From positions 12,896,001 to 12,960,000 of the forward strand of contig NC_047075.1 in assembly GCF_902459465.1 (NCBI RefSeq): DNA of 64,000 nt, written 5' to 3'. Positions 10,534 through 47,533 of the stretch are shown piece after piece. The translations under genes were made by a program, and so were the position numbers. Within the stretch, counting starts at the first letter, position 1; every line of letters begins with the position of its first letter. This DNA is from Asterias rubens (taxonomy: Eukaryota). Under the pieces are notes generated by a model. It ran no database searches and was not told the origin of the DNA. It saw only the letters and a program-made list of their open reading frames with translations.

Positions 10534-10602
10534 GGGCTAGACAGCTCAGTTGGTAAAGCACTAGCACATAAATCCAGAGCTGCCATGGCAGATTCAAATC
10601 CT
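10534..10602 (+). repeat. Degenerate tRNA-derived (SINE-head-like) sequence, cut off right after its B-box
   Basis: GGGCTAGACAGCTCAGTTGGTAAAGCA (A-box) ... AGATTCAAATCC (degenerate B-box). It does not form a complete cloverleaf. Confidence 0.55.
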
Positions 10603-10779
10603 TTTTAGGTGTTCGGCCAACAGCCGAACAACTATTGTTATTGTTAGGTGTATGAGCACGAACACCTCTTGTTATTGTTCTGTTTTTAGGTGTTCGTGCA
10701 ATATGAGCACGAACACCTCTTGTTATTGTTCTGTTTTTTCTTTTTCTTCTCCTTCTTCCACGCAACTCTTCTCTGGATA

Positions 10780-11420
10780 ATAACTCAATATTGAAACTGA
10801 ATTGAACCTTGAAACTCATCAGACAATTGAACCTCAATAAGAGGACGGCACAGTTGTCATTACGTCATGATGACGTCATCAGGTGTTGAATTACAGGGTT
10901 TTTAAAATTGAAAATGACCTTTTGCTTTTTGCTGTATCTCAGCGAACATAAAAGCTATGATGTTCAAAGTTTTTGCATCTGATAGACCAAGGTTGGGGCA
11001 ACATTTGAAAAGTTAACGCCAAAATCGTACGACCTAAGCTTCCGGGTCGTTACCCTGGGTCGAAGTTCACCTTCGTTTTTTTTCGTCAAAAAACAACTTT
11101 CGAGCTTATCTACGGAATAACTCAAGATTGAGATTGAATTGAATGTTGAAACTCAACAGATAGTTGAACCTCAATATCAAGACAACACATACTTAATTAT
11201 GTCATGATGACGTCATCGGGCATTGAATTACGTTAGATCAAAGTTTAATATTTGTAAAAATCATAACTCAAAAACTATGATTCGGATTTTGACAATCTAC
11301 ACATCATCGGATAGATCGTTAAAAGTTGGACAAATGCTTCACAGAACCCGTACAATATTTTAACTTACTTCTGATTATAACGCGAGTTGAAAATTTTAGA
11401 TTATCTTATTTTATTTAAAT
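10780..11420 (+). repeat. Internal module shared by elements A and B
   Basis: TAACTCAAGATTGA.., GATGACGTCAT and AAAGCTATGATGTTCA blocks recur at 36990-37440 and 38740-39125. Confidence 0.8.
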
Positions 11421-14400
11421 CTTTAAAACTCTTGATCACTTCAGCATAATTTTTGTATCAGATTGGAGAACAGCAACCCCTCTTAAACTTTTGCACAGAG
11501 ATAACAACATTATAATCTGATGCATCTAGTCAAAACTAAAAAATGAAGCGCACCGTCCTACTCGTACCCCCCCCCCACCACTTTCATTGAACACGCATTG
11601 TACACATAACGTGTAAGAGCTTTCGCATCCATCGGTGTTACAACATATATTGCACCTCATCGGATAATCCATACACGCTAAATCTACAATGCACGTGAGA
11701 CTCCACATTTGTATACACTGTACATGTACTGTAGGTATTAATCTTGGCCCAAGACGCCAACGATCGATTGTCGCGCCCTATTATGGCTTGAATTAACCAA
11801 CTTGATTAGAACAAATGAGAGCTAGTAACACAATACGACCTCCGCTAAGTGTGAATAGCGCCCCCAAGCATGGAATTGGAACAACCACGTGTAGCGTACA
11901 TTGAAGAGAACACTTTAATGGTAGTCTATTCATGTAGTTCATGTAGCAGCCACTTCGTAAGGGAGTTTCAACCTTTCAGAAAGACCAAATAACTTCCAAT
12001 CAAACCTCAACAAATTGTTATTAAAATGAAATCCTGATTGTTCTAGAAGACAGCTCATACTGTAAACATCTTTTTGTAGCTATTGCTATTTATTTATTGA
12101 TAGTTGCTTCTATCAATCAAGTTTATTTAATTAAAATGCATCAAAAGAAAAACACATACAAATGACAATAGTTTTAGATTGGTTGATTCTTGGACCTTTA
12201 ATACAATCGTTTATGTCATTACATGATACAAGCAATTTAGTAAAGTATACCAAGCTTAATAATTCAGAAGACATTATTATCTGTAAAACAAATTGCTCTT
12301 TTTTATTTTGTTAATGTGTGAACGGTTGATTCTTTGAATCTTATAACACAATCTTTTCTACTAAAGTAAAAACAATGGTGCAAGTTAGTATGATACACGT
12401 TACCCATTAAACCTAACCTTTTTTTATTTTTCAAATTTGGTAACTTATACTCTGCTATTTTTTTGTGCCAATTCTAGGGAAGTAAAAGTTCACATGTTAA
12501 TTGTATGACATTTTAAATTGTGTTTGTTTGATACTTTGAAAACCACAAATAAGGAAGTTGGCTCATAATGTTCAGTTTAAACTGCTAGGCATTATGACTG
12601 TAGTTTGAGACACGATTTGACTATTACAGGCAAGTAAAAATTGATGCCATTATTATTCAGCTGTGTCCAATACTTATTATATAAATCTTATAAATTCGAA
12701 GTCCAACAAAGTCAAGAAAACACTCATAAAACTCATAATCCATATATATATTTTGTTTTAAATAGTCGGCCTATACATCTACACTAATAAAGTTACATTT
12801 ACAGTCAGCCGTTTCTTGCATATACTATACATCACTGAAAATGTTTGGTTTATTGCTATATGTAAACTATCAACCTGTTATGTAGTAATATAACAAAGCT
12901 ATCAATTCATAGCTAGATAACCAGCACTATTATAGTTGACAAGATTCAGGCGTGATATTAAGCCCAGTAGTAAAGATAAAAGGGAAATGTTAACTACAAG
13001 GTCTGACCTATGTACATGTAATTTATAAAGTTTTCAAAGACATTTCTGAATATTAAATAGACTTTCTAAGGGTTTTGCTTATTTTACGAGGACAAACAAA
13101 TGAGAATAGCCCATATTAGATTTGTAATATTGATGTTAGATTTCTAAAACAAAGAATAGTATGCATGTAATTTTTGATTTTAGTTTTGTTTCAGATGCAA
13201 AGCTATATTGACCTCAGCCGGTATTATGTGATAATCATTTCTTCCTTTGAAATTATACATACACAGTACATCATTAAACTCCACTAACTATTGCTTGATG
13301 ACTATGCAATGTTCCATCTGTAATTTCTACACACATACCTGCGTTTAAGCTATATCTAGCATCCACTCTGGAGCTATTGATTGGCTACTATAGCAGTTCA
13401 GTATTTGGTTGAAAGTTTGTAATGTTCATTTTAAACTCCACACAAGAGTAGCTAGTGTTGGTCAATGAATTATAGTGAGAGGCTAATCCAGTTCTAGGAG
13501 TAATCCACCCGATACTGATAATCCACCCCAGGAGCTGGTTGTTGGCGACTATTGAAGTTTAACCTATTCCTGTTAACCAAAGAGAAAAAAAAGTCAATGA
13601 AAGTTTGAGTACTGTTATTGGTGTTTTAGATAATGGTCTGAAAGCTTAAGTCTACACATTTTTACACAAAACAGATTATTTACAGTACATGCAAATGTTC
13701 TAAACATACTGCATATTACATTAGTTTCAAGTGAGCATGGTTAGTGTAGCATTGTAAGATATGTAAATGTGAATAACCTACAAAGATTATACTGCTGACA
13801 ATTGGAATGAGTTTTTGCTTTGATTTAATTTCAACTCTTAATTCCATATAAGGTCTTAAATACTCCTGTATTCAGTGAAGAAACACAAATATGATGTCAA
13901 TGAATGCACTTCATTCAACCACTGACTCTAAACAATTCAATATGTACTTCTTAACACACTGGGTAAAGACAATGCCAATAGAAAATGTATACACAAAATT
14001 AAAAGGCTACAAATTTTAACAGGCCTTACAATCTGTGTGTTGGACAAGGCTTGACCCAACTTGACAAACCTTTTAACACAACTGCGTTTCAATCTGAAAT
14101 TGAATTTTGTACAATGTTTTATTCATGTTCAAACCAATCTTTCTCAGAGGCTGTGTGGTTTAGGGGCTCTTAATACTATGTAAAACATTACATACAGTAT
14201 GCAGCTAAAAGTCTCTAATTGTTGATCATGCAGTATGAAAGCCTAGCTGTCTGGTAACTGGTGTCAATACCAACTCTGGTGTTTCCAATCACTAGAAAGT
14301 GAGTTTGATTTCCAGTCTTGAAACTTGTGTCTTTAAAGCAAAACAATTAACAGTTATTGCTTTGTTCTTGGAATCCAAAAAAAAGATAAAGGCTCTGTTG

Positions 14401-15089
14401 TTAAGTAATGTGTGAAATAAATCAGTTACACTTACCATTAAGAGAAGGGAGATTGATCTGGTGTGTCTGATATTGGTAGAAAATTGCGCCACATTACATT
14501 GTAATCCCTCACAAGATGTACTAGGTGCTGCAATTTCAAAAACAAAAACATGCTAAATTGTCATAAAATTAATAACAATAAGCTCTTTGAGATTGCTACA
14601 GATGAAACACTTTAAAAAGCACTAATATTTATCAAATCACAGAGGACTTAAACTGTAGCTTTACGAAAAAACCTAATTGAAACAAGACAGCTTTTAGCAA
14701 TAATGGGAACAATTTCCAAGCCACATGTATGCTAGTAACAAAAACATGGTTTAGATATAAGTCTGTCGCATGTACTGTTACAAAACGGAACACATGTAAT
14801 GGAATATCAGATACACAATTATGAGAGCTTAACAGTATGGAATGACCAAGTTGGTGGCTGGTCACTGTTCAAGCGAATTTTAAGTGCAACCACCAACAAA
14901 GGCAATTACAAGCAATGAACATCTTGTACTCTTACTGTTAGTAATAATCCAAGGCATTAGTCAGTCACTGGAACTACGGAGTGGTGCCAATGCACATTGA
15001 TTTAAGAATAGTATCTGCTGTGACTAGACTCAAGGTGTAAGCCTCTACCACAGTATCCACAGGCTTTGTGCTTTCCTCTGGATTCAGCT

Positions 15090-15680
15090 GTCTTGAGCCA
15101 GCAGCATCAGGTCTTCCTCAAACTAATAGAGTCTCCTCTGCATCTCCTGCTAAGCTTTAAGGTGCATCTACATGTATCTGCAGCGACAGCTTCCCAAATG
15201 CTTATAAACTAACAACTAGTGCATTGAAATCACACTTGTACAGATGTATGTGTCTTTGTAGTGCAAGTGGTTCTTCCAATTGGTATCTCCTGATGACAGC
15301 TCTCCATAGAGAAGGTCTTTTGGAATGCAGCCATCCTCCAATCTGGTGACACAACTTGACCAACACACGCATCCCTGCTTAAGGGAATGAATACATGGTG
15401 GTGATTACCCATTCTCGCGGGTAGTACATGTATGTTGTTGGTTACGTAGTATTTTCAGGAGATGTTGAGGATACGCCTCAGGCAACATATTTACGAAAAG
15501 AGTTCAGCCATTTTTCTTTTGGGAGCAGACAGTCCAGGATATACTACTGGAGCGTATTCACCACCAAGTCTTTTCATCCTTTTGTTGGACCAGATTATCT
15601 TTGAAAGTCTGGAAGGTAGTAGCAGCCTGTCCAATACATTTGTTTAGGGTCTGTCTCAAGACATAGACAGTCAGTAATCA
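15090..15680 (-). pseudogene. Degenerate RTE-clade LINE 3' fragment (RT C-terminal region)
   Basis: Minus-strand translation across frameshifts gives LEDGCIPKDLLYGELSSG..HYKD and WEAVAAD, matching the RTE RIPKDLLYGEL...RYKD...WE..AADR signature. Several stops. Confidence 0.6.
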
Positions 15681-17941: not shown

Positions 17942-20900
17942 TTACAATGTCTTAAACTCAACTTTTATAGCTTCATGATAACTATAGTATGTTGGCCTAA
18001 CTGTAGCTACAATGCTGTCTATACCTCTGACATACACATGATCAATTAATGTGGCATTCTCTGTTGTTGCATCTGTTACATATTGCTTGTATCCATGCTC
18101 TATCATTAATTTCTCAATATGTGAATGATCATTATAAATATTTTCATTAAAATCTCCCATCACTATACATCTATTACTCATCTTGTTGATTTCATCAATT
18201 AATTTGTTTACATTCTCAATGAAATATTGCATTTTATAAGTGGGGGGTCGGTAGATGACAGCCACTATCACTGAAATATCAGATATTATATGAAACGCAA
18301 TGTACTCTAGATTCTGAACTGCAACATTCAAACGACTGAAGTTTTTATCTCTTTTGCCATACACTGCAACTCCTCCATGACTTTGCTGCTGTAGTGTCTT
18401 CATCTGATCATTGTATGACAAAGCTCTAATTTGGTGGTAACATTTGAAATCATCTAAACTGACATTTATAATTTGATCAGCATCTATCCATGTTTCTGTA
18501 AGGCAGATAAAATCTGAATCCATCATTTCTTTTTGACATTTCAAATCTTTATAATGAGGTAATAATCCCTGAATATTATGCAGTATTATTTCTGTTGTAT
18601 CTTTCTGAGTGTTGTTTTCATCATTCACATATTCCTCAATTCCTCTCACTGCAGGCATTATCTTTAGAGCTTCTGCTACCGATTTATCACAGTATATCAA
18701 CTTCTCATCAAAACCTTCAATAACAAGACCCTTTAATGATGTCACACGACTCAAACTCACATATGCTTGACCTGCTGAAAATGTTCGTTCAAGACACACT
18801 ACAGCTTTATTTGTTGTCATACCTTGTACTTTATGTGCAGTACACGCCCAAGCTAGTTTTAATGGAAATTGTTTACGGATACACGACTTCCTAATATGTT
18901 CTTCTTGTATCTCAATAGCAACATTAGTATTTACATCAGATGAGGTTGATTGTCTTCTTAATTTAGAACCAACATTCTTATTATCAAATGTTACATTGAT
19001 ATACTTTGGCCCAGATTGATCTGGTAGCATCTCTATTCCATTTACAACTGCAAATGCTCCATTCACAAGTCCATCAGATACATCTATATTTTTAGTCAGC
19101 ATAACTCTAGCACCAATGCCTAATAATAATGACTGACATAAAGAATTTGATCTTACTGATTTCAAAGGTGTGTCTCTCAGTTTCATATTTCCAGCTGCAT
19201 CTTTCTGATAATCTTTAGCTTCAATCAATATACATTCTGTACAAGTTTTATGAATTCTTTGTAGATTATATTTATCAACTTGTTTATTTGTTGGATAGAT
19301 GTGTAAAGCATCTTCAATATCCTCTCCAGTTTCACAACTACTGAGTACAGCTTTATCTTCTGCTGTTAAAGTGTCCTTCTTTGTTTTAACCCTCAATTTA
19401 TTTAACACTTCAGTAAAAGCTACGTCATTCTTTTGTCTCATTATTTCTATTAACTCAATTTTCCTAAAATTTGCATGCCACAAATTGGATTCTATTGTAT
19501 TGTGATGCAATGATTTTCCTTTAACCGGAGGTAGCTGATAAAAATCACCAACAGCAATTACACTCACATCACCAAAGGCACATTGACTTCTAGTTTGCTT
19601 AATCTGTCTTAATCTTCCATGAATATAGCACAGCATCTTTTGATCAACCATAGAAACCTCATCAATAATTACAATTTGAAGCTGGTTCAATTTGTTGCGC
19701 AAAGTGCTGATTTTTTCTTCACCAAGTGGTTTATATGGTAGTGACATATCAGTACCAATGCTGAGAGCAGAATGTATTGTAAGGCCATTGATATTAAATG
19801 CTGCGACACCAGTTGGGGCTGTTAAGATTACAGATACATCATCAGGATTATGACTCATTCTACCAAGTAAACGTACAGCTTCATTATATATACATTTAAT
19901 TAAGTGAGATTTGCCTGTACCAGCTCCTCCAGTTATGAACATATGAAATGGTTCAGGATTCTTTCCATTGACTTTATCAAGACACCATTGTCTAATTTTA
20001 TAGAATATTTGACTCTGTTTGGCATTTAATAACCTCATCAAAGTTTGCGCTTCATGTCTTTGGATTTTGGCTTTATTGTATTCAATACAATAATTTCTGT
20101 CTTCTTTTTTATTGGATTGTAAATCAGGAATACCACACTCATCTACTTTGTCTTCTACATTTTGATTCATTTCATCTATACATTCTTGTCTTTCTGCTTC
20201 AGTCTCTGGACAAATCATTGCCCATGCATCTTCCTGAGGACCAAACTTTGCCAAGTATTCTTCAGCTACATCTACTGCATCACTGTCTGCTTCAAACTTC
20301 TTACGATTACTATCCACAACAAACTTCACAGATACTATATTACACTGATCAAATTTTACACTTCCATTTTGATAAAAATCTGTGAAAGTTTCAAAGGGTG
20401 CAGGTTTCAAATGCTTATCAACACGATGTGGCAGGAACAGTTGTAGGATGCTATGGTAGTATTTCTCTGGACTCTTTATTGCATTAAATCTTGGATACTT
20501 TATAACTGCACCATCAGTTCTAGTACGCTTCTGTATATATCCTAAACTGTTCTGTAATTGATGAACATGTTCATATGTTTTTCCACTGTGGACCTTTAAT
20601 GCTTCTGTACTTGACAATATTCTGTACTCAGAGAAAAATGTAGCGAGACACATTACAGCAAATTCATGTGTTTTAGGTCTGGCTTTATATCTATCTAATT
20701 TACAAATCATCCATACGTTATCATCATCACCATTTGATTTGTTCTGAATCAATCTGAGTGGTAAACTCATTCTAACAAGGTTCTCTCCTAATGGTATAAA
20801 TTCAACTTTCCTTGATCCTTCTTTCAACCTCAAGTTGCACACTCGAAAACATGCCTCTTGTGCTGAAACTTCTCTATTTTGTAAATACACTTGTCCTATA

Positions 20901-27869: not shown

Positions 27870-28012
27870 GGTGTCATAGGGAAATCTGTCCCCCGGAGAT
27901 TCTGTCCCCCATATGGGAAATTAACGTGGGCTGAAGGAGGATGATTCAAAAGAGGGTGCTATCAAAAGCAGTTCGTACAGCCATATGGGGGGACAGAATC
28001 TCCTGCCACACC
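27870..28012. mobile_element. Small MITE
   Basis: Inverted repeats GGAGATTCTGTCCCCCATATGG / CCATATGGGGGGACAGAATCTCC, with outer GGTGT...ACACC. Confidence 0.55.
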
Positions 28013-31000: not shown

Positions 31001-31029
31001 CTTACAACAAGGAAAAACGTCTGCTGGTT

Positions 31030-31990: not shown

Positions 31991-32125
31991 TATTTTATAT
32001 CTTAATTAGTTAAATACAATATTAATATGGTTATTGGTCGAGATAGATTGAAAGGCATTCACTGCTTAAACTGATGAAATCTAATTGCCCAATAAAAACT
32101 AAGAAGTGGCCAGTAATATACACTC

Positions 32126-33617: not shown

Positions 33618-36600
33618 CTGTAATTTAGCAAAACAGATAATTGCATTATAAAAAAGTTCAAAGAGGTTATTTTTGTGAGATTGTGGAATTCCTAAGAAAG
33701 CAAGTAATTATCAATTAACTATCTTAATAAGCTAAAGTTAATAATATCACCTATTTAAATTTAATTATTTAGTTCTCCAGAATTGTGGTTCACTTCTATT
33801 CACAGTATAAATGGAGTAAATATGAATTAATTCATTTTAATTTTGTGGTTTCCTGCCTTGTATGCAGACATAGATAATTGTTTACTTGTTTAAAATAAAC
33901 CAAAACAAATACCCTAAATAAAGTCAAGTACAATGTTATCATATTGTTAGATGAAGTGTGACATATCACATAAATTTAAAATATTTTCAGCAATTTTTAA
34001 GCACATCAAGTAAACAATCATCATAATGATGTAACCAACGTCTATAACTAACAGCTCAGGTATTTTTTTTATATGGATTGTATCCCAAAGTCTAACAAGT
34101 GCATCAGTTTTTCTTCATCATTATTATACAATTTTTTAAATTATTAATTGACAGATCAATCAGCAGAAATACGACCACCAATAACTTAGGAACAGATACA
34201 TAACATAGAAATATAATACAGTTTAAGTAACCGAAAGTTATAATAATTAAAAATTAATTAATGTTTACCATTTCAAAGAAAAAGAATACGAGAAATAAGT
34301 AAAAAATTGGCAAGCACATACATTGTTTGTGGGAAGAACTTCATCAATCAAATAATTTGTCTCACAATAATACAGCAAATTGAATAATTGAGTCTCACTA
34401 AAATTAAAAACAAGCAGTGACAGTGTAAACAATATTTCTGCCTTTAATGACATTTTGCAAGACATGTCATGTGTTGAAAGTTGAAAGATAGGACCACTTT
34501 ACTCTCAACAAAAAAAGAAACGAAAACATTATGTTTATGCAAATCGTGTATGCAGTTGCTTTTAATGGCAGACAATCTTTTGGATTGAAAGACATTTAAG
34601 GCAAAGTTACAACTTTAACTTCAAGCATTCCAACATTTTTTTAACTTGAAATATTTAGTAAGAAGGTCGGTCACATAGTTTTTCTTTCTCAACAACTATT
34701 CTGTTATCAGGTTGAAAATACATTACGTCAGGATAGGAATGATCGAACAAACTTACCTTGATTGACTGATTCATACGTTAGAAGTGATGGTCAATGTACA
34801 CGGACGCATGGGGATGTAGCGCTTCGGAAAATCTCGAGTGCGCTCGGAACTTTTCGAGTGTTGAGGTTGATTCAAAAGAGGGCGCTATCAGAAAAGGTTT
34901 GTGCACAGATTTGGACCCATTGCACAACAGGCGCGGCGCACTTGCACGACGTATCATTTCCGCCATTTTTGGTGCCAAAACGTGCAAAAAGAATGGTACA
35001 TAATGCGCGTCTACCATTTTTGCCCTTTCTGGAGTCCATTCCTTTTGTGCACGTTTTGATTTGTGTTAAACTTGAGTCTTGGATTATTTCCAGAACAAGT
35101 TGTAAAAACTACGTTTACGGATTAAACCTAATACCCAACGTTTTGCAATCGGCCATTGAATGTTCATGAAGTGTTATCTTACATTTTTAAGGTGAAACAT
35201 GTGATTTTACGAAACGAAAGCTTATAAAGTGAAACCCCCAGCAGTGATATATAATTATTTTGTTTACAATTTTCTTCTGATTTCCTCCCCTAAAAGTCAC
35301 AAAAAGTCAATCAAGCGACTTTTGTACGGCTCCAAGTTTCCTTTATTAACTTTGTCAAGATACAATCAGAAAGGCAACCTTTACACAAAATCGGCCTTGT
35401 ACATCAGATGTTGACAATATTGACGATAATAAGGCCAATCTGCTATACGCGAACAAAACAAGTTTTGAAATAAGAAATGTTATTTATTTGCTTTGCAGTT
35501 TAATTTTCCGTGAATTTCTTTATTTTAGGAATTTCCTAAGATTCATCATTATTTTTAAATCAATTATCGAGTCAATATCTCCGAAAAATTCAGAAAAAAT
35601 GCAAGAAAATGAGAGCGCTGCCTCGAGACTATGCCTAAACGTGTACAGAAAGTGCTGAAGCACCTTAACTTCCGCCTACAGTTTCAGAAAATCTAACATT
35701 TCTGTTTGGCGTCCCCTGCTGTCCGTCTATAGATATTATAATAATGTCAGTGGGGACCCTGCCGTGAAATTTTAATGAATATAGAAATTAAACCTCACCA
35801 AAGTCATGCTTGTGTAAAGGTGTGTTTTATTAATGAATAAACAGTCACTTTCCATTATAAAATACCTTTGACAGTGAATGGCATGCTTGATAGTTATTCT
35901 TGTGAGTAAATCCTTGCCTCGTTTTGAGATCTGCAGCTAAGATGAAAGAGAATTCGAAAGTTGCTGCTCTGTGTGAAATTAAATTGACCCTTTCCCCTTT
36001 CAATTATATCAATGAGAACGTCGTCAATTTACACGGCGCCATCTGCTGACATTGTTTCATAACATCGGTACTCTTGAAATATAAACTACTGTGTTCTACT
36101 TCTCTTTAGAAAGCTTTTGCACATTTAAATATTCAGTTGATAATCTCTAACCGGGCCATCTGCCTACATCAACCATTGCTATGAATCTTGTATCATGTAG
36201 AACTACATGTTTGGGTTTTTCTTAATAATGCATAAACATGGTGCTGTCATCCAATTATGATGTTCCAATATTAAATTTGAACTTCCAGTTTCGGACTGGA
36301 AGTCAACAACAAACGCCTCACATTCTGGGTGGCGTTTGTTAGGTTTTGAAGACCTTTCCAATGATTTGTAGATTGCTTTGGTCAGGACTTATACTTCAAC
36401 TTCCAGTCCTGTATCACACATTGCATTGGTAAGGTAAAATGTCGTCACCATTTCACTCAATCATCATCATTGGGAAAGTATTTATCAACACTAAGAATTG
36501 ACACACAGAATGCGAACCAATTTGACCTTGACTTCCGGTTCAAACCGGATGATCGTATTCAATACTTGAAACAATGATAACTCCCGAACCACACATTAGA

Positions 36601-36882
36601 TTTTTATCAACTACATGGCATTACAGAGAGCTCCTAGGACTTACCTAGCGCTACACAGTATGACCTCATTTGACCTAGCGCTACACAGTATGACCTCATT
36701 TGACCTAAGTTTTGGTTCAAACCGGAAGTTGAAGATTTATATTGGAACAAAATCTTACTCCTGAACCACAAATCGAGGTGATACAATAAAATATCATTAA
36801 ATCTTAACTTGATGACATCGATCACGAACACCTTGTTTTTGTAGCAAACAAAAATTCAATGTCTAGTTCTGTTTGTTTTTTT

Positions 36883-39125
36883 TCCTCGCGTTCTTCTTTC
36901 CCTGCGAACCTTCTCCAGCAATTTTAAACAAAAGTAAAGCTTGTACAAACTTAAAACTTACTATGTACATCGGCAATAGTGAGTAGACGAAACCGCCACT
37001 TTTTGGGAATGATGACGTCATGGCAAGGTTTTTAAAGTTGAAAAATGACATTTGCTTTTCGCTGTATCTCAACGAATATTAATGCTATGATGTTCATACT
37101 TGGGCATCACATAGATAAAGACTTGGACAACATTTGAAAACTTAACGCCAAAATCGTATGACCTCATCTTCCGGTCGTACCGGAAGGTCAAACTCTGCCT
37201 TTGTGTTTTTTGTGTTTTTTTGTAAAAAAAGACAATTTGTTGTCATAACTCAAGATTGATATGGAATTTAACATTGAAACTCATCAGACAATTGAACCTT
37301 AATAATAAGACCACACAAACTTAATGATGTCATGATGACGTCATCAGGTTTTGAATTACAACAAATCAAAGTTAAATATTTTAAAGAAATCATAACTCCT
37401 GAACCACATGGTGGATTTTGACAATCTACATATCATCGGACAGGTCGATCAAACTTCAAAAAACGCTACACACAAAATGACCCCATTTGACCTTGACTTC
37501 CGGTTCAAACCAAAGGTTGAACAATTTTACAATTTTTGATCTCTAAAACTACAAAACATTTCAACATAAATTTTGCATCCCGTTATAGATGAGTGATCCT
37601 GCTCAAACTTTCCCACAGAGATGATACCAATTTGACCTGAAACTCTGGTCGAAATCGGACGATAAAGCCCATGGATGTGTTGACCCGCGTGATAACTGCG
37701 TACACTGCAAAAGCGCTTTGGCTGGCCGTTCCGCTCCATTGATCACACCTTGTTCAGTCCACGAGGCCTGTGTGTTCTGGTCGGAATAGTGCATCGTTTG
37801 ACTGTACGCGTGATTTCGATTCATGTTTTGACAAGTCTCAGGTCATTGTACTTACAACGTAGCGCTTGTTTAATGGTGTACCAACATTTTACAATTGAAG
37901 TCCGCTCATATCATATTCGGCGTCAAATTGTTCCCCTGTTCGCCCTTCTCATGGCTTAATTATCAAAACGGAATTAAAGACGAAGCTTCGCTGAGATGGC
38001 CACCTACTGCAGCGATTCGTATGACTTTTAATTATGTGAGAAAATGCAACCAGAAAAAGACGAACATTGGTTATGTTTTGATCAAACACCGGGAAGCGGA
38101 TTCGTGACATCGACTCGTGAAGGGTGTTTCTATCCGGCACTCACGGCAGTGTTTAGCGCACTACACGGTAAAGCTTTGTGTACAAATCATTGCTTTTTAA
38201 AATAAGTGTTTATTTAATGCCTAACAAAATCTAACGTGCATCCCAGTTATCTTAGTTGTATCTGTACCCGTGTCGTACACTTGCGAAACCTCTGTAATAC
38301 TTAATAAATAAGTCTTTTACAGTTATTTACTTCACAAGTCTAAAATTAGTAAACTGTTGTTTCGTATAAAGTTTCCCCAAATCCAGTTAACCTTTTAAGA
38401 AGTTTACTCTTGAGTTAAACATCACAAGGATCACAAAACCTTCAAACTTTGCACATAGTTAGCTCTTTACTAATAAAATACATCGCTTCAACAAGTATTA
38501 AACTTAGCATTTGTTTTCTGTGCAAAGAAAGGTATAAATGTAATAGATTTACACTTTTACTTTCTGTGAAAATTAAAAAGCTATCAACAATCTGTTCATA
38601 GATTTAATTTTCCTCGTGTTCTTCTTTACCTCTGAACCTTCCCAAGCAATTTTAAACAAAAGTTAAGCTTGTATAAACTTAAAACTTACTATGTACATAG
38701 GCACCAGTGAGTTGATGAAACCGCCACTTTTTTAGAATGATGACGTCATGACAGGGTTTTTAATGTTAAAAAAGGACCATTTGCTTGTTGCTGTATCTCA
38801 ACGAATATAAAAGCTATGATGTTCATACTTGGGCATCGGATAGATAAAGACTTGGACAACATTTGAAAAGTTAACGCAAAAATCGTACGACGTTAACTTC
38901 CGGGTCGTTATCCTGGATCAAAGTTCGCCTTCGTGTTTTTTTTATATAAAAAAAACTTTCGAGCTTATCTACGGAATAACTCAAGATTGAGATTGATTTG
39001 AACGTTGAAACTCAACAGATAGGTGAACCTTGGTATCAAGACACCACAGGCCTAACTATGTCATAATGACGTCATCGGGCATTAGACTACAATAAATCAA
39101 AGTTTAAAATCTGTAAAAATCATAT
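36883..39125 (+). repeat. Two diverged direct copies (~36883-37390 and ~38610-39125) of the internal module of element A
   Basis: TTCCTCG(C/T)GTTCTTCTTT..AGCAATTTTAAACAAAAG..AAACTTAAAACTTACTATGTACAT..GAAACCGCCACTTTTT..GATGACGTCATG present in both. Confidence 0.85.
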
Positions 39126-39618
39126 GGCGCGCAATTTGGGGGAATTTCCAACGGCGCTCTTTTTGGTCCAACGAAAGAGGGCGCGGTTGGGTATAAAGAT
39201 TTTAGAAACATTGAGCGCTATGTGCAGAGCGGAAAATCGCAATAGTTGAGTGATAACGTCTCGCACCAAAACCACAACCTTTTTTGAATTGATGACGTCA
39301 TTGATGAAGTCAATACATTAAATAGCTAGAAAATTTATATCTTGAGAATCACAAATGCTACCAATAAGCTATTTTTATGGTCTTTTCCACGACAAAAGTA
39401 TTGTTAGTGTTTGACCTTGCTTTCGTTTAGAACCGGCTTTTTATCGTGACATAAGAATTTCAGTTGAAAAACTAAACCTAAAAATCCGGAGTGGCTTTGC
39501 ATTAACGATCGCATTATGGCACACTTTTCTAAAACATTTTAAGGGGATTCTCAAATCTGTAATGCACATTTAACTATAAAATAACGACACATTGTATAAA
39601 AAACATCTTTAAGGTTCA

Positions 39619-42600
39619 CACGGCCGTTCCACCCCCATTAGCACAACGTTATAAACTATCCTGAATTTGTTTGCACTGATTTCATTACTCCAGTGCGCCC
39701 TCTCCCGTGACATCACATAGTCAAGAGAAATCCAAGATGGCGTCCAAAAAAATTGTCGTAGAAAGCCGGAGTAAAATATGAATAAAAAATAGTTTTATGA
39801 AAAAATAGTTCGGTGAAAAGTGTTGTTAATAAAAACCGAGTGTGAATTATTGCCGTTCACAACTTTCTAGGTTATTGACTTGATGAAGGGGCAAGAAAAA
39901 TTGCAGAAATGGGGTCGTTTTCGCCATTTTCTGTGATGAAAATTTGTCGTCGTGTTCTTTCACGACTCTTAAAAATAACAATCGTAAAATATTCATTTTA
40001 ATTCAAATGGAAGTTTTCTGGAACTGTTCTTTTAAGTTTCTTGAAGATAATATTCATCCCAACCAAAATCTTGAATATAAACCAAAGGCCAGCGACAGAT
40101 TTTGTAAAAACGGGGGTTGAATTGGTCCTATTTTTGTCGAATCATACTTGTTTACGTGGTGTTTGTACGGAGCGTATATAATAACGCACTCTGCAGTACA
40201 CACACACAACCCGGGCCCGTGTTGCGCACGCATCCGTGTGGCGCGCTAATCGAAATGTACAAAAATTATGTTAACCCTACAGACGAACCTCGTCGAAGTG
40301 GTTTGTCATTTTATTTGGGGGAATGAAAGTTTACTATTGATGGCTAGATTGAGCATCTAAATATGAAATCAATAAGCAGGCAAGTGAGATGCATGTACGT
40401 TGAAGATGGAGACTTTATTTCAGCAACGTGTTTCATAATACTACAAACTGTACACCATACAACATGAGTTTTTTATTACATCAGCAAGCTTTAAATAAAC
40501 TTTGTAGGGTATGTAGGAGATTAACTACTAAGCATACAAGTTCAACAGCCGAAAAGCATACATACCAGTGCATCAACTATGCTAAAGAACTCGAAACTGT
40601 ATTTTCTATAAATATTTGGAGAGATGATGCCCTTGTTCATCCAAGTACAATTTGTTGGAGATGTGAGCGTTCCCTAAGGCATGAAAGATCTGGCTCTCTA
40701 AGTGGAACAAGGGAGAGTGCTTCTCAAAAGTGGGAAAACACTCGCGTGTACGCTGCAATGTGTGTGAAACATACAAGACGCAACAACGTGGGGGGCGTCC
40801 CCAGAAACGAAAGCGGAATGGCAATGGGCTCAACCAAAAGGAAGCAACAGTTCCTCCCCCGCTTTCTTTTAATTGTTCTCAAGTTTCCAGTGAGCAAATG
40901 CCCCATAATATGGATGTCCTTAGTAACTCAGGAGAGGCAACATTGTTCATCTGTACCATATGCCAGTGTATTCTAGGGAAACCAACAGTTCAAACACCAT
41001 GCGAACACAATTTTTGTGCGGACTGTTTACTTGCTTGGTTTAAGCACAGCAATAGTACGACTGTCCCATGTCCAGTTTGTAATTCATCAGTTGAAATTCA
41101 TAATGTAAATCCCTGTTCAAGAATTCTACGGGTTCAGCTGACAACCCTCCCAACAGTTTGTATAGCTTGTGGAACAATAGGGAAGCTTGAACTAATGAAA
41201 ACCCACATATGCGCACAAGAGCAGCCAAAACCCACAGCATTTACATGTTACGCAAGTGACCCCCTACCCGGCTCGGAACCAACCAATGAATGTGACGTCA
41301 CAACAGCAGCAAGATTACCAAAATCCATGGCATCAAAGCACATCAAGGGCACCCCTATACCCCCCGAGATAGAGGCTGCCACAGATAGGTGGACTGTCCA
41401 CAAGTTGAGGGAAAATCCGTGTGCACGACTGAAAACACCAGGAAGGGTAAATGTTGTTTCTTTTACAAAAGGAAATTAACTAATAATATAAAATTGTGAA
41501 AATACTTATAAAAGGGGGAAAAATTAAAATTTAAGTGTAGAAAAAAAGAAGTGGGAAGATATTCAAGTCGCCATTCAGGTTTCCTATTTTTTTTCTTCAG
41601 CAATTTGGTATTTTTGTTACAAAAGATTGCCAACATTATAAACTCATTGTTATCTTTGTATACATATCTCCCTTTAGCCGGCATATTTTACTCTGGCCAG
41701 CAAGCAAGCAAAATCCACAGACGAGGATGATGCCTGCCCTACATCTCAACCAAGTGAGGAAGCTATGAGCGTAAATCGTTCTCTAGCCATGATGCGAGAG
41801 TGCCAATTTGCATGGGAGCAGTTTCGAAAGCTTCGCAGGTGAGGTTTTATAACTATACTGTTGACAATAAAATTTCCTCTCAACTTAATGCTGCTCATAA
41901 ACAGTAATATTTGAAGTGTAAAGGTTTCTTGTCTATGTTTCTTCAACTGAATCAGGTACCTAGGATCTATGGGAGTGTCTCTTCCATCAGAGCGTGCCAT
42001 GAGACACCAGCAGAATACACTACTCAGTGACAATATTGTCGGGAAATTGGTCCCCCTCCTTTTCAAGTCAAGCAGTGCTGATGGCTCAAATGGGTTGCAG
42101 ACAAGAGAGGTTCCATGTGTGACTGTAAAGGATGTCTCTGCAATGGTCCTTGATTATCTTGACAGGCATGACAGGTGAGAAGTTTTCTTTCGATATTTCC
42201 CTGAATGGAAACGAACAAATGCAAATAGTAGGACACAAAGGCAGAAATTCATGAATAAAAATGGACTGACTCAACTTCTATTAGGTCTAAATAGGAAACT
42301 AGTTTCAGAAATACAAAGTGCAACTTTAGAATATTATTTTAAAAGATTTTAGTCTGCTTCTTTGCATTTAATTGATGGTGCATTTTATTGATAAATTTTA
42401 TTTATAATTATGTCTGAATATTATATTTTCAGAAATGGAGGTTTGACATGGCATGGCTTTATTCCTGTTGACGAGATATGGGTCAAGATTGGTGGGGACT
42501 TTGGTGGTACATCTTTCAAGATGTGTTACCAAATTGTTAATACACCAAGTCCCAACTCAACAAGGAACACCGTTTTTTTTGCCTGCTTTGAGGCCCATGA

Positions 42601-45600
42601 CTCATCAGCAAACATAGAGCGGGTACTACCTCCAATTATGTAGCAGGTGGCTCAACTGGGCAGAATGACATGGAGGTAAAAATATTTTATTTTCAACTAC
42701 AACCAACATTGCTGCATTGCTATTATCATACTGTACCTTGGTATTCAGACCTCCCTGAAGATTGGAACATAGTTTCTTAGGGTTGATACAAGTTGGTTAT
42801 GCACCATATGTACTTCCTGTTCAAAAAAACATATTTAATTAAAATAAGTTAACAGTGTCAACAAATACTTGTTTCTGCACATTAGGGGAAAGTCCATAAA
42901 GCTGTTCGTGTTTGGTGACTATGAGCTACTAACCAAACTGTATGGGATCTGCAGCTGTAATGGTAAGTATTTTTCAATAATACTTGTTATTTATTAAATG
43001 GGTCCCAAATTATGGCTACGCTCACTGCTAAATTCTGTGTTGCAAATCTTCATTCTCTGCTTAGTGTGCATGTGCCAAATTTCTGCCCTAGTTGTGTAAG
43101 CAAAGAATGCCTAGTAATATAGAGTATGCATGCGCAGGACTCTACCCCATGAAATTGTGCTGTGATTACACCGCATAACATATCAAAGTCATAGTGCAAA
43201 TTTCTCCATTTAGGTTTGCCACAGGAATAAATACAAATCTAAATAGTAAGACGTAACTCAAATAACCTTGTTTCTTTTGTATCCAGCCCGCCACTGTTGC
43301 ATTTATTGCACCGCTTCAAAAGAGCAGATGACTGTGCCCTTAACAGACAGGTCCAACTTTCCTGCAAGAACACTTGAGTCCATCGAAGCCAATTACAAAG
43401 CATACATCGCAGACGGTTCCAGAAAATCAAGGGCAAAAGATGTATCCTGTAGTGTCATAGCCATGCCTGTTTTGATGGTCCCTGTAGATCATGTAAGTCT
43501 ATTGGACAGCCTGAAAAGTACAAAAATAATCTACTGTTAACAACTATCATATTATCACAAATGCAATATTATCCGATACTTCTTTGTCTGTATTTATAAG
43601 CCCCCCCCCCCTTTACTTGACAAACTCTCCTGGCTTTATATATATATATATATATATAAATAAAATTCTCCTCATTCAGGTTGTGCTTCCGACCCTCCAC
43701 ATGTCACTTGGCATCTTTAAGAAGCTTTATGACATGCTGGAGGAGAGCTGTCATCGGATAGATGTACAACTCTTTCAACTTTGCGTGTCACACTTTGACT
43801 CAAGCGATCCTGCAGAAAACAATTTTGACCAACTAGCGATGCAACAGTGCAAGACGGAGGAGAAAATGAAGGCGGACAAAGCAAAAAAGGAAGCTGAGCT
43901 GGATCAGATCGAAGAGGAACTTCCTCTCCACCTGCTTCAGAAGGAACATCAGCAAGTTGATGGTGTTTTTCAAGAGCTGGCTTACAGAGCATTTGAACTT
44001 CGCCGTCAAATTCAGGGGCTTGTAAGTGACGTTTCATTATGAATTTTATTTTGGAAATGTCCAAGAAGCAAGGCAACTAAGATTGCAGTTTTGGAATTTT
44101 GATCCATAATAATTTGGTCGCCAAATTCACGAAAGTCAAGGCGCTAAAGGCGCACATTTCCTGCTCATTTACAATGGCTTCAATTACAAACCAGTCAAAG
44201 CCACAGATAGTAATATGGTTTTAATTTTACAGTTACTTTATAGGATGAGTCTCAAATGGAACTACCTGTTGGGTCTGGTCCTGTTGTCGGCTGTTTGGAC
44301 AAAACTCTGAAGGAGCACAAAGTCCAAAGGCAAGCTACCATGGGAAAGCTTTCGTCGGAAACCATGTCCACAAGTGTTGCAAAGTACGTGTATGTTTCTG
44401 GAGTTCCACCTATAAAATTGTAATTCAAATATGTTATGATTATTACACAATATGGAAAACGATAAATCCCTTGGAATAATAGAGATCAGACTTAGAAACA
44501 CATTTATTTTACCTTTACTTCACAGCCTGATGTTATTGCAGCACTAACAACAGCTCCCCGTAAACTCCTTGAAGAACTTAAACTGTGATGCCATACCCGT
44601 CTTCAACCATCAAAAGCTCATAAGGGATGCTGTGAAAGTCGGTGTAACCTTCAGTGAAGTCTTTCTGAAATTTGCAGACGTTCATGTCGGAATTAATCAC
44701 AGCAGGGCAATCACACCTCAAGACCTCCGTAATATTGGTATGCACATTATAATGACAATTTGAATAAATGTTTGAAGCAATTACATGGATAAATAAATTT
44801 GGTTTACTCCTTTTTTTATATTAGTTTCGATTTTTCATTTATTTATTTATTTTCCTGTACTTAATATTTTTTTTCAAGCGCTGTGATTTAGTGGAGTGTT
44901 TTTCAAATGTCGTTTACTATTATCATTATTATTAGTTGTTACTCACTTTTATTTTCAGATGTATGTATCAAACGCTTCATGGCCTGCTATAGATCAAGCT
45001 TCCCAAATGCATCCATAACCCCGAAACTCCATCTTCTTGAGGACCATACACTTGAGCAGTTGCAACGGTTCGGTGCTGGATTTGGACTGCTCAATGAACA
45101 GGGGGGTGAACTTATCCACACCGAATTTAATAGAATTGGGAGAGTAGTTTCTGGAATGAAAGACCCACTCCAACGCCTCGTAACCACCGTGAGGAGGCAT
45201 CACATCAGCACTACACCTGAAGTACAAGACTGCATGCTATCAAGAGCAAAAGAGGAGTAATTCTGCATTGCCTGAAATAAAGCACAAAATTTAATGAAAG
45301 AGCATTAATTTAATTAAAGTGCATTCAATTCCCTGATTTTGGCATGTGCTGTACACACATTTGAATTAAAGTAATTCTACCTTGCAATAAATGTGTTATA
45401 CTGATGTGGCGTGATAATAAACCCTTTCACGCTAACGTCCCATGTTCCGTGATAAATTCAGGTCATTCAAACAAGTATTTTTACATGATTCGCAATGTCT
45501 TGCATGTTTATACGCTATGCGTCAATCCGTCAATAACATGTATGAAGATTATCAAGTTGCACAGTTCAAAATCATTAACGCACCATAGCACTCGGTACAG

Positions 45601-46738
45601 ATTCAACTTGGTGCATACAAAATTACTGTGGAAGAAAGGATCTTTCTTCATGCAGTCATCATATGTACATTAGTGATTTATTTTTTAAAATAACTATAGA
45701 GATGTGGGTAAGATCATCATCTAATTTTGACACGTTTGATTGTGAACTGATGAAGTCAACTCAAACTGAATGATGATGTAAAAGCAAAAGATAAGTCCTT
45801 CCCTTGTTGTCCTTCCAGGCTTCATTCATCACCCTTTAAATGTTTAAGTTTTCATGTTTTTTTTTTTACATGTTTGATTTTTGACTCTTGAGCATGTTGA
45901 GATTTTGAGCAAGTAGGCCTAATATTAATAATATATATATATATATTTCTTTTTTACTGTAATTTTTATTATAATAAAACAATTAAAAAAAAAGCTTTTA
46001 TTTTTAACATTCCATACCTATGCTTATGATGTCAAGTTCAGTGAGTTGACTCGTTGATAATTATTAATGTCTCTACATAATATCCCTTTGGGATTTGGAA
46101 AACCCTAGAGTGACTAGACCCTAGACCTTCGTCTGTTTAATAAACACATGCAAAATACGCTGTGTATGTAACACACGCGTAATGACTATGCATGTGAATC
46201 ATGTACGAAAACACAATACGTGTACATGTGATAGTGACTTAATGCAACGTGTGACATCGACAAAAGCCCTAATTTGACTCAAAAATTACTCGAATTTTAC
46301 GAAATCTACCGCTGGCCTTACCTTCAAACTTCTTCAGTAGGTGGGGGAAAACGTCATTTTGCTGTTACAACGTATCCGGTACCAGGGAAAACTTTTGTTT
46401 CGAAGAAAATCGACGAAGAATAACGGGAATTTTGTCACGTGTCTTTCGAGCCCGCGATTTAACGCTACACGTAAACAGCTTCTAAATCTCACATGAATTA
46501 TTCATATTCTAATATTTACATGTCAACAGGGTACACATGAGATTTAGAGTCACATGACTCAAAGATTTCAGCAAAAATAATTAATTCAACCAATCAAATA
46601 CGGTTATTAGCGTGCCTCATTAATATTCAGTGCACGAGGTCAATAAAGGTCATATTACACCGAGCTTTGTGACGTCGCAAAGCGCTGGCTACTTTTTAAC
46701 AACAGAGGGCGCAATTAAATATTGGTGGAACGGCCGTG
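39619..46738 (+). mobile_element. Chapaev/N-RAG-TP-type (RAG1-like) DNA transposon 1, complete ends
   Basis: Perfect 15-bp TIR CACGGCCGTTCCACC (39619-39633 / 46724-46738). 4-bp TSD TTCA (39615-39618, 46739-46742). Confidence 0.92.
40464..45260 (+). pseudogene. RAG1-like (Chapa/CND + RING + Zn finger + DDE core) transposase, 10 exons, disrupted
   Basis: HQQALNKLCRVC..HPSTICWRC; RING CTICQCILGKP..CEHNFCADC..CPVC; IWVKIGGDFGG, FGDYE, CCIYC, LHMSLG, PKLHLLEDH, EQGGE. Frameshifts at ~40735-40738 and ~44335; in-frame TAG at 42641-42643. Confidence 0.88.
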
Positions 46739-47533
46739 TTCAATGTTTTTGAACCACTACATCATGTAACGTCCAACCGAACACCGTGTTTTTGTAATTA
46801 ACAAAAAGCACTATGTCTAGTCTAATTTTTGTTTTTTGTTCAACCAAAAATTAAAATCCTTTCTATCAATTGTGATGATCCAATATCCCATGTCAATATT
46901 ATAACATTTTATGTTTGATAATTCAGATTGACAAAACATGATCACAAAGGTTTTTTAATATGTTATTTTATTTAGATTTTATAACTTAAATCATATTTTT
47001 AGTAATTTATTCAAACATTAGCAGGGGTCCACTGATGCATTGGACTGCAACCATGATTTAGCATTGTGACACACACACAAATTTGTAATATATCCTTTAT
47101 TTATAATTTTTTTATCATTTGTTTTTCATTTACTCCTCGAAGCATTTTGCATCACTTAGTTGATGCTATAAGTTATCACACAAGCGCGAGTGGAATACGG
47201 AAAAATATAGTACTTCTGTGTCCCATATCCAACGAGGCCACTGGTAGTGATATTAGCCGTGCAATATAGGTTTTTATCACCACTCTATTCTGCGAATCTG
47301 ATTGGTGGATTAGCGCGTACTTGAAGATAAAGTCTAATATAATGTTTGATGTTGATGTCAGTTGTTGAAATTCTTGTTAAAAAAAAAGGGGGGAAAAAAT
47401 TTTTTTGTTTTTCGTGATTAAATGAATAGTTTACTGCGCAACAACAGCAAACAAGGGCAACACCAAGAAATATTTTGTATGATTTTGGATATCAGTGAAG
47501 TAATTGATAATCTGATTTGATCTATTTTGACAG

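What the first reader, a model, noticed from the sequence alone, without database searches (positions are those of the whole stretch)
10607..46820. Russian-doll Helentron-like end pairs bracket 36 kb, each head matching its own tail
Seen: head A (GGTGTTCGG) matches only tail 46777 (CCGAACACC), and head B (AGGTGTTCGTG) matches only tail 36823 (CACGAACACCT). Both tails have the same geometry: inverted repeat, 7-bp hairpin with a 5-nt loop, then ATGTCTAG|T. Removing B rejoins A's head (..ATTGTTATTGTT + CTGTTTG..) into the same sequence that follows B's head (..TTGTTATTGTTCTGTTTT). Known: Helitron2/Helentron ends have asymmetric inverted repeats with hairpins and insert in T-runs; canonical Helitrons end in CTRR. 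These ends combine both traits. Inference: the family inserts into its own 5' T-rich head, building stacked heads (three at 10607-10718) and giant composite units.
Basis: partly seen in the sequence, partly recalled or inferred. Interest (0 to 1): 0.7.

Follow-up and report, generated by a model that had tools for sequence, protein, structure and literature searches.

The report
Nested Helentron transposons in sea star
The 36-kb stretch is a small rolling-circle transposon (Helentron type) that received a 26-kb protein-coding relative inside its own front end, plus an unrelated 7-kb transposon; this self-nesting recurs across the genome, but the element type is already known.

Summary
The heads at 10607, 10646 and 10688 and the tails ending at 36866 and 46820 are real, non-chance ends of a multi-copy family. 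Exact-pattern counts genome-wide are 313 A-type heads and 159 A-type tails, with reversed-pattern controls of 0.

An intact 2.9-kb copy elsewhere aligns to 10607-10645, 36870-39618 and 46738-46820. Element A is therefore an ordinary non-autonomous Helentron (HINE), interrupted twice:
- A 26.2-kb insert (10646-36868) sits in its head spacer.
- An unrelated 7.1-kb TIR transposon (39619-46738) has a TTCA target duplication.

Removing the first insert restores the canonical head spacer. That insert, B, carries Rep/PIF1-helicase/AP-endonuclease, OTU and OB-fold genes, all antisense to head-to-tail. It is probably the autonomous partner.

Self-nesting is general:
- 185 head-to-head junctions exist, and every listed junction follows TT.
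- 41 of 159 A tails run straight into post-head sequence, against 9 that run into a head.
- Independent last-in-first-out dolls occur on C6, C11 and C18.

The end architecture is the published Helentron/HINE design (Thomas 2014), not a new hybrid. No 26-36-kb composite recurs. This scan had already noted a different Helentron-type HINE in this genome.

The parts
10607..10645 (+). Head of element A (A-type HINE): palindromic 5' subTIR hairpin 10607-10633 plus spacer ATTGTTATTGTT.
   Evidence: It is 97-100% identical to the heads of intact copies L026 and L015. The exact 27-nt head occurs 313 times in the genome.
10646..10687 (+). Defective B-type head (M): 9 nt missing from the first hairpin arm, with its own spacer and T-run. 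It has no tail of its own.
   Evidence: L021 13-48 aligns at 92%; weak fold. A similar hairpin-deleted head occurs in the C6 nest.
10688..14434 (+). Head B (hairpin 10688-10718, spacer and T-run to about 10745) and the non-coding 5' part of element B.
   Evidence: Many genomic copies begin at 10683-10687. The 2.1-kb B-type HINE aligns to 10688-11511 at 88%. C18:5.06 Mb copies are 99% identical over 10684-12433. The 6.6-kb C18:3.18 Mb element is colinear over 10683-14434.
17942..23701 (-). Uninterrupted 1919-aa ORF: Helitron Rep (HUH motif at aa 698), PIF1-type helicase (Walker A at aa 1258) and a C-terminal AP endonuclease. This domain set is the Helentron hallmark.
   Evidence: Pfam hits: Helitron_like_N 9.8e-35, PIF1 9e-28, Exo_endo_phos 1.2e-8. 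Motifs. A 96-98% identical copy lies at the end of contig C24, and more distant copies exist.
23643..26966 (-). 1107-aa ORF with an OTU cysteine protease and a Herpes_teg_N-type protease domain. It lies upstream of the Rep/Hel ORF and overlaps it.
   Evidence: It is 96% identical to the C24 copy.
32132..33620 (-). Exons of a candidate OB-fold (RPA-like) accessory gene.
   Evidence: Pfam SHLD2_OB1, 3.4e-6, just above its cut-off. tblastx shows it conserved next to the Rep/Hel genes at C24 and at C15:13.71 Mb. A PDB sequence search gave nothing.
36505..36868 (+). 3' part of element B. The tail comprises the subTIR 36823-36833, the stem-loop 36836-36854, the terminus ...ATGTCTAG at 36866, and the two Ts 36867-36868 that travel with the element.
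   Evidence: The region is colinear with the 3' ends of the 2.1-kb B-type HINE and of the C18:3.18 Mb element.
36869..39618 (+). Body of element A, resuming with the rest of its head spacer (CTG, T-run, CCTCGCG).
   Evidence: L026 copy positions 36-2837 align here at 95%. L015 aligns at 98% and L032 at 98%.
39619..46738 (.). Unrelated 7.1-kb TIR DNA transposon inserted in the 3' part of A. It has perfect 15-bp TIRs beginning CACGG and a 4-bp target duplication TTCA (39615-39618 and 46739-46742). It holds RING-finger ORFs.
   Evidence: the intact copy L026 has a single TTCA; RING domains at 40730-41479.
46739..46820 (+). 3' end of element A. The tail comprises the subTIR 46777-46785, the stem-loop 46790-46807 and the terminus ATGTCTAG at 46820.
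   Evidence: It is 92-96% identical to the 3' ends of intact A copies. The A-type tail pattern occurs 159 times in the genome.

Best explanation
The region is a pile of nested transposon insertions, not one giant element.

Element A is an ordinary 2.9-kb non-autonomous Helentron (a HINE; Helentrons are the endonuclease-encoding branch of rolling-circle Helitron transposons). A second Helentron, B (26.2 kb including a defective extra head), integrated at a TT in the 12-nt spacer just behind A's 5' hairpin. It made no target duplication and brought two Ts with it. Later or earlier, an unrelated TIR transposon landed in A's 3' part.

B is most likely (about 65%) the autonomous partner of the B-type HINEs. 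Its 5' 3.75 kb and 3' 0.36 kb are a conserved element chassis, and between them lie the Rep/helicase/AP-endonuclease, OTU and OB-fold genes, all read antisense to head-to-tail.

The family's known preference for TT in T-rich DNA, perhaps reinforced by transposase bound to the head hairpin (inferred), makes the spacer and T-run behind every head a hot spot. New copies therefore nest inside old heads. Heads pile up at the 5' side, and bodies with tails line up at the 3' side in last-in-first-out order.

Heads outnumber tails. I infer two causes: recombination between nested bodies, or mobilisation from an outer head to the first tail, removes inner tails; and head blocks are amplified in tandem afterwards.
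For: Shown:
- The ends belong to a multi-copy family. There are 262 tail-pattern hits, 110 palindromic-head sites, 313 A heads and 159 A tails, with controls of 0.
- Element A matches an intact copy in three colinear blocks.
- Removing 10646-36868 restores the canonical spacer.
- The C11 nest shows ATTGTT|AGG...CTAG|TT+ATTGTTCTG, the same two-T rule at a different TT. Tails followed by TT+GTTCTG exist as well.
- On C6, a B head, one defective and three intact A heads, three A-type tails, then B-type HINE positions 51-2103 at 96% running to a B tail, form a full doll of opposite polarity.
- On C18:3.18 Mb, a B-type element is nested behind four stacked heads of a fourth type.
- There are 185 A-to-A head junctions, and every listed junction follows TT at one of four or more spacer positions.
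- 41 of 159 A tails are followed by post-head sequence, against 9 followed by a head.
- The Helentron domain set and accessory genes are present.
- B's two ends are colinear with shorter elements.
- No other strong palindromic end lies inside B.
- The published Helentron design, including one family with minus-strand Rep, matches (PMC4067079).
Against: - No empty allele of either insertion was recovered. The public runs were available only as contigs that break in the repeats.
- B as a 26-kb unit is single-copy in this assembly. Its only close relative (C24, 96%) is cut by the contig end and has the OB-fold gene inverted.
- Among three more distant Rep/Hel copies, one clearly has a head facing the gene's 3' end, one has only a degenerate head-like site, and one has no head within 10 kb.
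- The middle head has no tail of its own.
- The C13 array of at least 25 heads has a higher-order period of about 510 bp. Not every stacked head is therefore an insertion event, and the genome counts are not counts of independent events.
- Exact-pattern counts are lower bounds, and the loci inspected were chosen from clustered hits.
Confidence: 0.85

Rival explanations
1. B is not one 26-kb autonomous element. It is a short B-type HINE that was later bloated by an independent autonomous Helentron on the minus strand, whose own ends are degenerate or unrecognised, and by other repeats.
For: The genes are antisense to B's head-to-tail direction, which is the minority arrangement in published Helentrons. 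The interior holds other repeats: a SINE/MITE-like 150-bp family at about 27868-28013 and a 240-bp family at about 14266-14514. The C24 copy shares the gene block but not the surrounding sequence beyond a 41-bp satellite. The C92 copy has no head within 10 kb of the Rep 3' end.
Against: No palindromic subTIR or tail-like hairpin other than B's own lies between 10.7 and 36.8 kb. B's 5' 3.75 kb and 3' 0.36 kb recur together as the ends of a 6.6-kb element with a proper head and tail, as expected for an autonomous/deletion-derivative pair. A second Rep/Hel copy (C15:13.72 Mb) also has a head 7.9 kb beyond the gene's stop codon, pointing at the gene, compared with 7.25 kb here. A minus-strand Rep has a published precedent, Helentron-Da-40.
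Confidence: 0.3
2. The stacked heads and serial units arise without insertion into heads. They come from rolling-circle amplification of circles that lost their terminator (the model of Xiong, Dooner and Du 2016 for plant Helitron arrays with many 5' ends and one 3' end), or from unequal crossing-over or slippage of a roughly 50-bp unit.
For: Heads outnumber tails (313 against 159). The C13 head array has a higher-order repeat of about 510 bp. Nine tail-to-head tandem junctions exist, three with exactly CTAG-TT-AGG, as expected for concatemers or circle junctions. The plant precedent is summarised in PMC12628747.
Against: This model cannot produce the window's structure or the C6, C11 and C18 nests, in which a head of one subfamily is separated from the rest of its own spacer and body by complete elements of another subfamily. 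There the missing spacer remainder reappears exactly after the inner tail. Truncated spacers always end in TT at several different positions. Tail-to-post-head junctions are 4.5 times as frequent as tail-to-head junctions.
Confidence: 0.1
3. One reading: the whole 26-36-kb nested structure is a composite unit that the family builds and then moves as one giant element.
For: In principle, rolling-circle transposition from an outer head to an outer tail could move everything in between.
Against: The interior sequences 12434-17942 and most of 27-36.5 kb have no second copy in the assembly. 7.1 kb of the 36 kb is an unrelated TIR transposon with its own target duplication. Intact A copies are 1.2-2.9 kb and B-type HINEs are 2.1 kb.
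Confidence: 0.03

Closest known systems
Helentrons and their non-autonomous HINE / DINE-1-like derivatives (Thomas, Vadnagara and Pritham 2014, PMC4067079)
   Same: The protein is Rep/helicase with a fused C-terminal AP endonuclease, and OTU and RPA-like accessory genes are present. The 5' subTIR is palindromic and lies at the terminus, and its copy lies about 35 nt from the 3' end. A 7-bp stem-loop sits about 12 nt from the 3' end. Insertion is at TT in T-rich DNA without target duplication, and Ts travel with the element. Short non-coding derivatives far outnumber the coding element. One published family (Helentron-Da-40) also has its Rep on the minus strand.
   Different: The host is a sea star, and four related head types (A, B, C, D) coexist. 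The element is unusually long (26 kb). It shows a strong tendency, not described in that paper, to insert into the spacer or T-run behind its own or a sister family's head.
Plant Helitron arrays with multiple 5' ends and a single 3' end (Xiong, Dooner and Du 2016, Plant J 88:1038; known to me through the review PMC12628747)
   Same: There are many stacked 5' ends, fewer 3' ends, and a link to the birth of satellite DNA.
   Different: In plants the units are truncated elements repeated head-body-head-body, explained by rolling-circle amplification. Here the heads are separated by only 6-45 nt of spacer, the bodies and tails follow in reverse order, and the spacer remainders match, which indicates nested integration.
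Shuffled Helentron/satellite loci of the Pacific oyster and TE dimers formed by insertion-site preference (both as summarised in PMC12628747)
   Same: Helentron parts are truncated, tandemised and inserted within other elements. Self-targeting acts as a seed of tandem repeats.
   Different: Here the target is a defined short spacer behind the 5' hairpin, and the nests are clean enough to read the order of events.
Canonical Helitrons and the Phytophthora proto-Helentron (3' CTAG, insertion between A and T)
   Same: The last four bases before the terminal Ts are CTAG, which fits CTRR, and a hairpin precedes the 3' end.
   Different: There is no 5' TC. Insertion is at TT, not A^T. SubTIRs are present. 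Two Ts follow CTAG and move with the element.

Membership tests
Helentron (autonomous) | Rep (HUH) plus PIF1-like helicase with a C-terminal AP endonuclease in one protein | tested here: met
   Helitron_like_N 9.8e-35, PIF1 9e-28, Exo_endo_phos 1.2e-8 in the uninterrupted 1919-aa ORF 17942-23701(-). HUH motif and Walker A.
Helentron / HINE | 12-15-bp (often palindromic) subTIR at the 5' end and its copy 38-60 bp from the 3' end | tested here: met
   The 5' hairpin stems are 8-12 bp and start 0-2 nt from the end. The 3' copy ends 33-35 nt before CTAG (35-37 nt counting the two Ts), slightly closer than the published range.
Helentron / HINE | 5-10-bp palindrome 8-35 bp from the 3' terminus | tested here: met
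   A 7-bp stem with a 5-nt loop ends 12-13 nt before CTAG in both tails and in all sampled genomic tails.
Helentron / HINE | Insertion at TT in T-rich sequence, no target-site duplication, variable terminal Ts | tested here: met
   Self-nested copies serve as filled and empty sites at three different TT positions of the head spacer. Exactly two extra Ts appear and there is no duplication. Solitary copies are flanked by TT on both sides. No allelic empty site was obtained.
Helentron / HINE | Non-autonomous derivatives share termini with the coding element and outnumber it | tested here: met
   2.1-kb and 6.6-kb elements are colinear with both ends of B. There are hundreds of HINE ends against about a dozen Rep/Hel loci. 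Identity to B is 78-99% depending on the copy.
Helentron | Accessory OTU protease and RPA-like genes | tested here: met
   OTU at 1.9e-10. The OB fold is supported only by SHLD2_OB1 at 3.4e-6 and by conserved linkage, so the RPA-like part is weaker.
Canonical Helitron | 5' TC and 3' CTRR termini, insertion between A and T | tested here: not met
   The 5' end is (T)AGGTG and the flanks are TT on both sides. CTAG is present but is followed by two Ts that move with the element.
Helitron2 | Asymmetric terminal inverted repeats with Rep/Hel lacking an endonuclease domain | tested here: not met
   The end geometry is compatible, but the protein carries an Exo_endo_phos domain.

The most novel reading that the evidence does not exclude
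Integration is not just attracted by T-runs but is guided. Transposase bound to the 5' hairpin of a resident copy would capture incoming copies and place them at TT sites within about 40 nt downstream (homing to heads, across sister subfamilies A, B and D). Mobilisation from an outer head to the first tail would then add one head per cycle. Together these would be an intrinsic Helentron mechanism that manufactures head minisatellites and offers a second route, besides rolling-circle amplification, to the many-5'-ends arrays seen in Helitrons.
Probability: 0.25. Interest if true: 0.6.

Novelty: new member of a known kind. Interest (0 to 1): 0.4.

Why it matters
The locus offers a clean, readable natural record of Helentron integration. 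Precise filled and empty comparisons at several TT sites show that two Ts travel with the element, and the last-in-first-out order of heads and tails proves nesting. It also contains an uninterrupted Rep/helicase/endonuclease ORF whose coding element has defined ends, in an echinoderm, a group for which the 2014 survey (PMC4067079) reported Helentron proteins but no full-length elements. It suggests that multi-5'-end arrays, usually ascribed to rolling-circle amplification, can also arise by self-targeted insertion, a plausible seed of satellite DNA. For annotation, it warns that 26-36-kb 'elements' bracketed by matching ends may be nests. It does not change what is known about how Helentrons are built.

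Tried and rejected
- Chance occurrence of the motifs is rejected (genome controls 0).
- Empty alleles from public reads could not be shown. Only Logan contigs were available and they break in the repeats. The laid stretch was swamped by other copies. One contig of another organism (X4, record 27) follows the 5' flank to 10605 and then diverges, but its continuation could not be read.
- The outer limits of the coding element could not be fixed from other Rep/Hel copies. The C24 copy stops at the contig end and diverges beyond a 41-bp satellite. The C15:13.72 Mb copy is too diverged outside coding sequence. C92 has no head within 10 kb. L035 holds only an ordinary 2.1-kb HINE.
- A hairpin scan for alternative termini inside B found none.
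- ARAGORN on the repeat just 5' of head A found no tRNA.
- Pfam scans of 14 further ORFs in B and in the 7.1-kb insert gave only one OB-fold hit.
- PDB sequence searches of the OB-fold exons gave nothing significant.
- The search with 26900-36780 was saturated by a 150-bp repeat and says nothing about the rest.
- A loose pattern for spacer remainders behind tails was as frequent as its control, so only individual hits were used.
The sampling of loci is therefore partial and biased towards clusters.

Full report
**1. The observation**

The window is a eukaryotic chromosome segment (G000:C15:12896001-12960000; 417.6-Mb assembly). Earlier notes of this scan call the organism the common starfish; I did not verify this.

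The 8-mer CGAACACC occurs six times in 64 kb, only at the claimed heads and tails. Chance expectation is 0.58.

Read directly, each head is itself a palindrome followed by a T-rich spacer (ATTGTTATTGTT, then CTG and a T-run):
- Head A is at 10607-10633.
- A middle head at 10646-10668 lacks 9 nt of its first arm.
- Head B is at 10688-10718.

Each tail holds one copy of the second head arm (36823-36833; 46777-46785), a 7-bp stem with a 5-nt loop, and ...ATGTCTAG followed by T. As single-stranded DNA the two intact heads fold far better than shuffles (z -5.3 and -6.7), and the tails fold modestly (z about -2.5).

**2. The ends belong to a real, abundant family**

- The tail pattern has 262 exact matches in the genome and the palindromic-head pattern 110 sites. 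Reversed-pattern controls give 0.
- Simple 2.1-kb elements with one B-type head and one B-type tail are common, for example L021:3182-5284.
- Many copies begin within 5 nt of window 10688.
- In all tails sampled from about 30 loci, the A-type subTIR (C-CGAACACC-G) goes with the A-type loop and terminus, and the B-type subTIR (CA-CGAACACC-T) with the B-type ones. Upstream heads are of the matching type. The tail of the window's own element B is a variant: it has the B-type subTIR but ends in ATGTCTAG like the A type.

**3. What element A is**

An intact 2.9-kb A-type copy (L026:1007-3921) aligns to the window in three colinear blocks:
- 10607-10645 at 97%
- 36870-39618 at 95%
- 46738-46820 at 96%

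A is therefore a normal non-autonomous element with two interruptions.

The first interruption is 10646-36868. With it removed, the spacer reads ATTGTTATTGTT+CTG+T-run+CCTCGCG, as in uninterrupted heads.

The second interruption is 39619-46738. It has perfect 15-bp terminal inverted repeats and a TTCA duplication, where the intact copy has a single TTCA. This is an unrelated cut-and-paste transposon. From memory, the CAC... TIR and 4-bp duplication resemble the Chapaev group, which earlier notes report elsewhere in this window; I did not test this.

**4. What element B is**

- The 2.1-kb B-type element aligns to 10688-11511 (88%) and, in patches, to 36528-36854.
- Copies on C18:5.06 Mb are 99% identical to 10684-12433.
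- A 6.6-kb element on C18:3.18 Mb, with a proper B head and B tail, is colinear with 10683-14434 and 36505-36768.

The two ends of B are therefore one conserved chassis.

Between them, all on the minus strand, lie three genes:
- An uninterrupted 1919-aa ORF with Helitron Rep, PIF1 helicase and AP endonuclease (HUH and Walker A motifs).
- An overlapping 1107-aa ORF with OTU and Herpes_teg_N-type protease domains.
- Exons of an OB-fold protein, conserved beside the Rep/Hel genes at two other loci.

No other strong palindromic end lies inside B.

A second, 68%-identical Rep/Hel copy (C15:13.72 Mb) also has a head 7.9 kb beyond its stop codon, pointing at the gene, compared with 7.25 kb here. I conclude, at about 65%, that B is the autonomous Helentron with antisense genes. 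The rival is a short HINE bloated by a separate coding element.

B as a whole is single-copy in the assembly. The only close gene-block copy (C24, 96%) is cut by the contig end.

**5. Self-nesting is general**

Independent nests:
- **C6 (reverse strand).** The order is a B head, one hairpin-deleted and three intact A heads, a 2.9-kb A body and tail, two further body-tail units, and then positions 51-2103 of the B-type HINE at 96% ending in a B tail. This is a complete doll of the opposite polarity to the window.
- **C11.** An A element sits in another A head at ATTGTT|AGG. After its tail come TT plus the missing ATTGTTCTG.
- **C18:3.18 Mb.** A B-type element lies behind four stacked heads of a fourth type.

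Genome-wide exact-pattern counts are lower bounds and not independent events:
- 313 A heads.
- 185 A-to-A head junctions.
- 159 A tails.
- 41 of these tails are followed within 25 nt by post-head sequence.
- 9 are followed by a head, three of them exactly as CTAG-TT-AGG.

Among the listed head-to-head junctions, all follow TT, at ATTGTT, ATTGTTATT, ATTGTTATTGTT or inside the T-run.

In the three cases where the site lies outside a homopolymer, exactly two extra Ts accompany AGG...CTAG. These are the window, C11, and the tails followed by TT+GTTCTG. So there is no target duplication and two Ts travel with the element. Their distribution between the two ends remains ambiguous.

**6. Why heads outnumber tails**

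The middle head here, and many stacks elsewhere, have no tail of their own.

I infer two routes that leave a truncated outer spacer and lose the inner tail: recombination between nested bodies, and mobilisation from an outer head to the first tail.

Shown: head blocks are also amplified secondarily. The C13 array of at least 25 heads repeats its spacer variants with a period of about 510 bp.

Rolling-circle amplification of terminator-less circles, proposed for plant Helitron arrays with many 5' ends (PMC12628747), may contribute. It cannot produce the mixed-subfamily dolls with matching spacer remainders.

**7. Comparison with what is known**

Thomas et al. 2014 (PMC4067079) define Helentrons and HINEs by these features:
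- the endonuclease-fused Rep/helicase
- palindromic subTIRs next to the 5' end and tens of bases from the 3' end
- a short 3' palindrome
- a TT target without duplication
- variable terminal Ts
- RPA and OTU genes

They also report one family with its Rep on the minus strand. Every one of these features is met here, so the end design is not a new hybrid. The CTAG before the terminal Ts resembles CTRR, but the Ts move with the element. Canonical Helitron membership fails (no 5' TC, no A^T target). Helitron2 membership fails because an endonuclease is present.

I found no paper that mentions both Helentrons and Asterias.

**8. Limits**

- No allelic empty site was obtained.
- Locus sampling was capped and biased towards clusters.
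- The OB-fold call is weak.
- The homing idea is inference.

**Verdict.** This is a real and well-resolved nested Helentron locus and a new member of a known kind. Its modestly interesting feature is the documented self-targeting of head spacers.

Noticed in passing
window 39619-46738: A 7.1-kb TIR transposon with perfect 15-bp inverted ends (CACGGCCGTTCCACC) and a TTCA target duplication. It holds RING-finger ORFs (40428-41479). No transposase domain was found among the ORFs scanned.
   Followed up: partly
window about 10470-10606: The 130 bp just 5' of head A are themselves a high-copy repeat, with contig depth 50-200 times that of the flank in all runs. The repeat ends in a T-run, into which A inserted. 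ARAGORN finds no tRNA there.
   Followed up: partly
L038+L039 (C18:3173301-3187300), reverse strand positions 1576-1858: A fourth head type (palindrome AGCTGTTCCGA..TCGGAACAGCT with spacer ATTGTTTTCG) is stacked four times, with a B-type element nested behind it. A further head type (AGGTGTTCGGAGC...) is stacked in L019.
   Followed up: partly
G000:C13:7128294-7129641: An array of at least 25 A-type heads whose spacer variants recur with a period of about 510 bp. This is a head minisatellite with higher-order structure.
   Followed up: no
window 27035-27360 and L012:9270-9883: A 41-bp satellite upstream of the OTU ORF has about 2 copies here and 15 in the C24 copy. Both copies have an intron-acceptor-like site just upstream, so the gene may have further 5' exons.
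   Followed up: no
window 38560-38608 and L032:9940-9984: The 2.9-kb A unit is an old internal duplication (36880-37394 resembles 38608-39124 at 81%). At the junction '...atagatttaatt', another copy (C15:13.74 Mb) carries an extra A head, which is one more TT insertion site.
   Followed up: partly
Read-laying run X4, record 27 (window 10332-10605): A 729-nt contig from a different organism follows the unique 5' flank up to 10605 and then continues for 449 nt unlike the heads. It may be an orthologous site without element A.
   Followed up: no
window 10198-10388 and 52413-53528: Coding tandem repeats in host genes: an 18/36-bp Asp/Pro/Asn-rich repeat just upstream of the insertion site, and a 102-bp repeat with 9 copies inside an ORF.
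   Followed up: no
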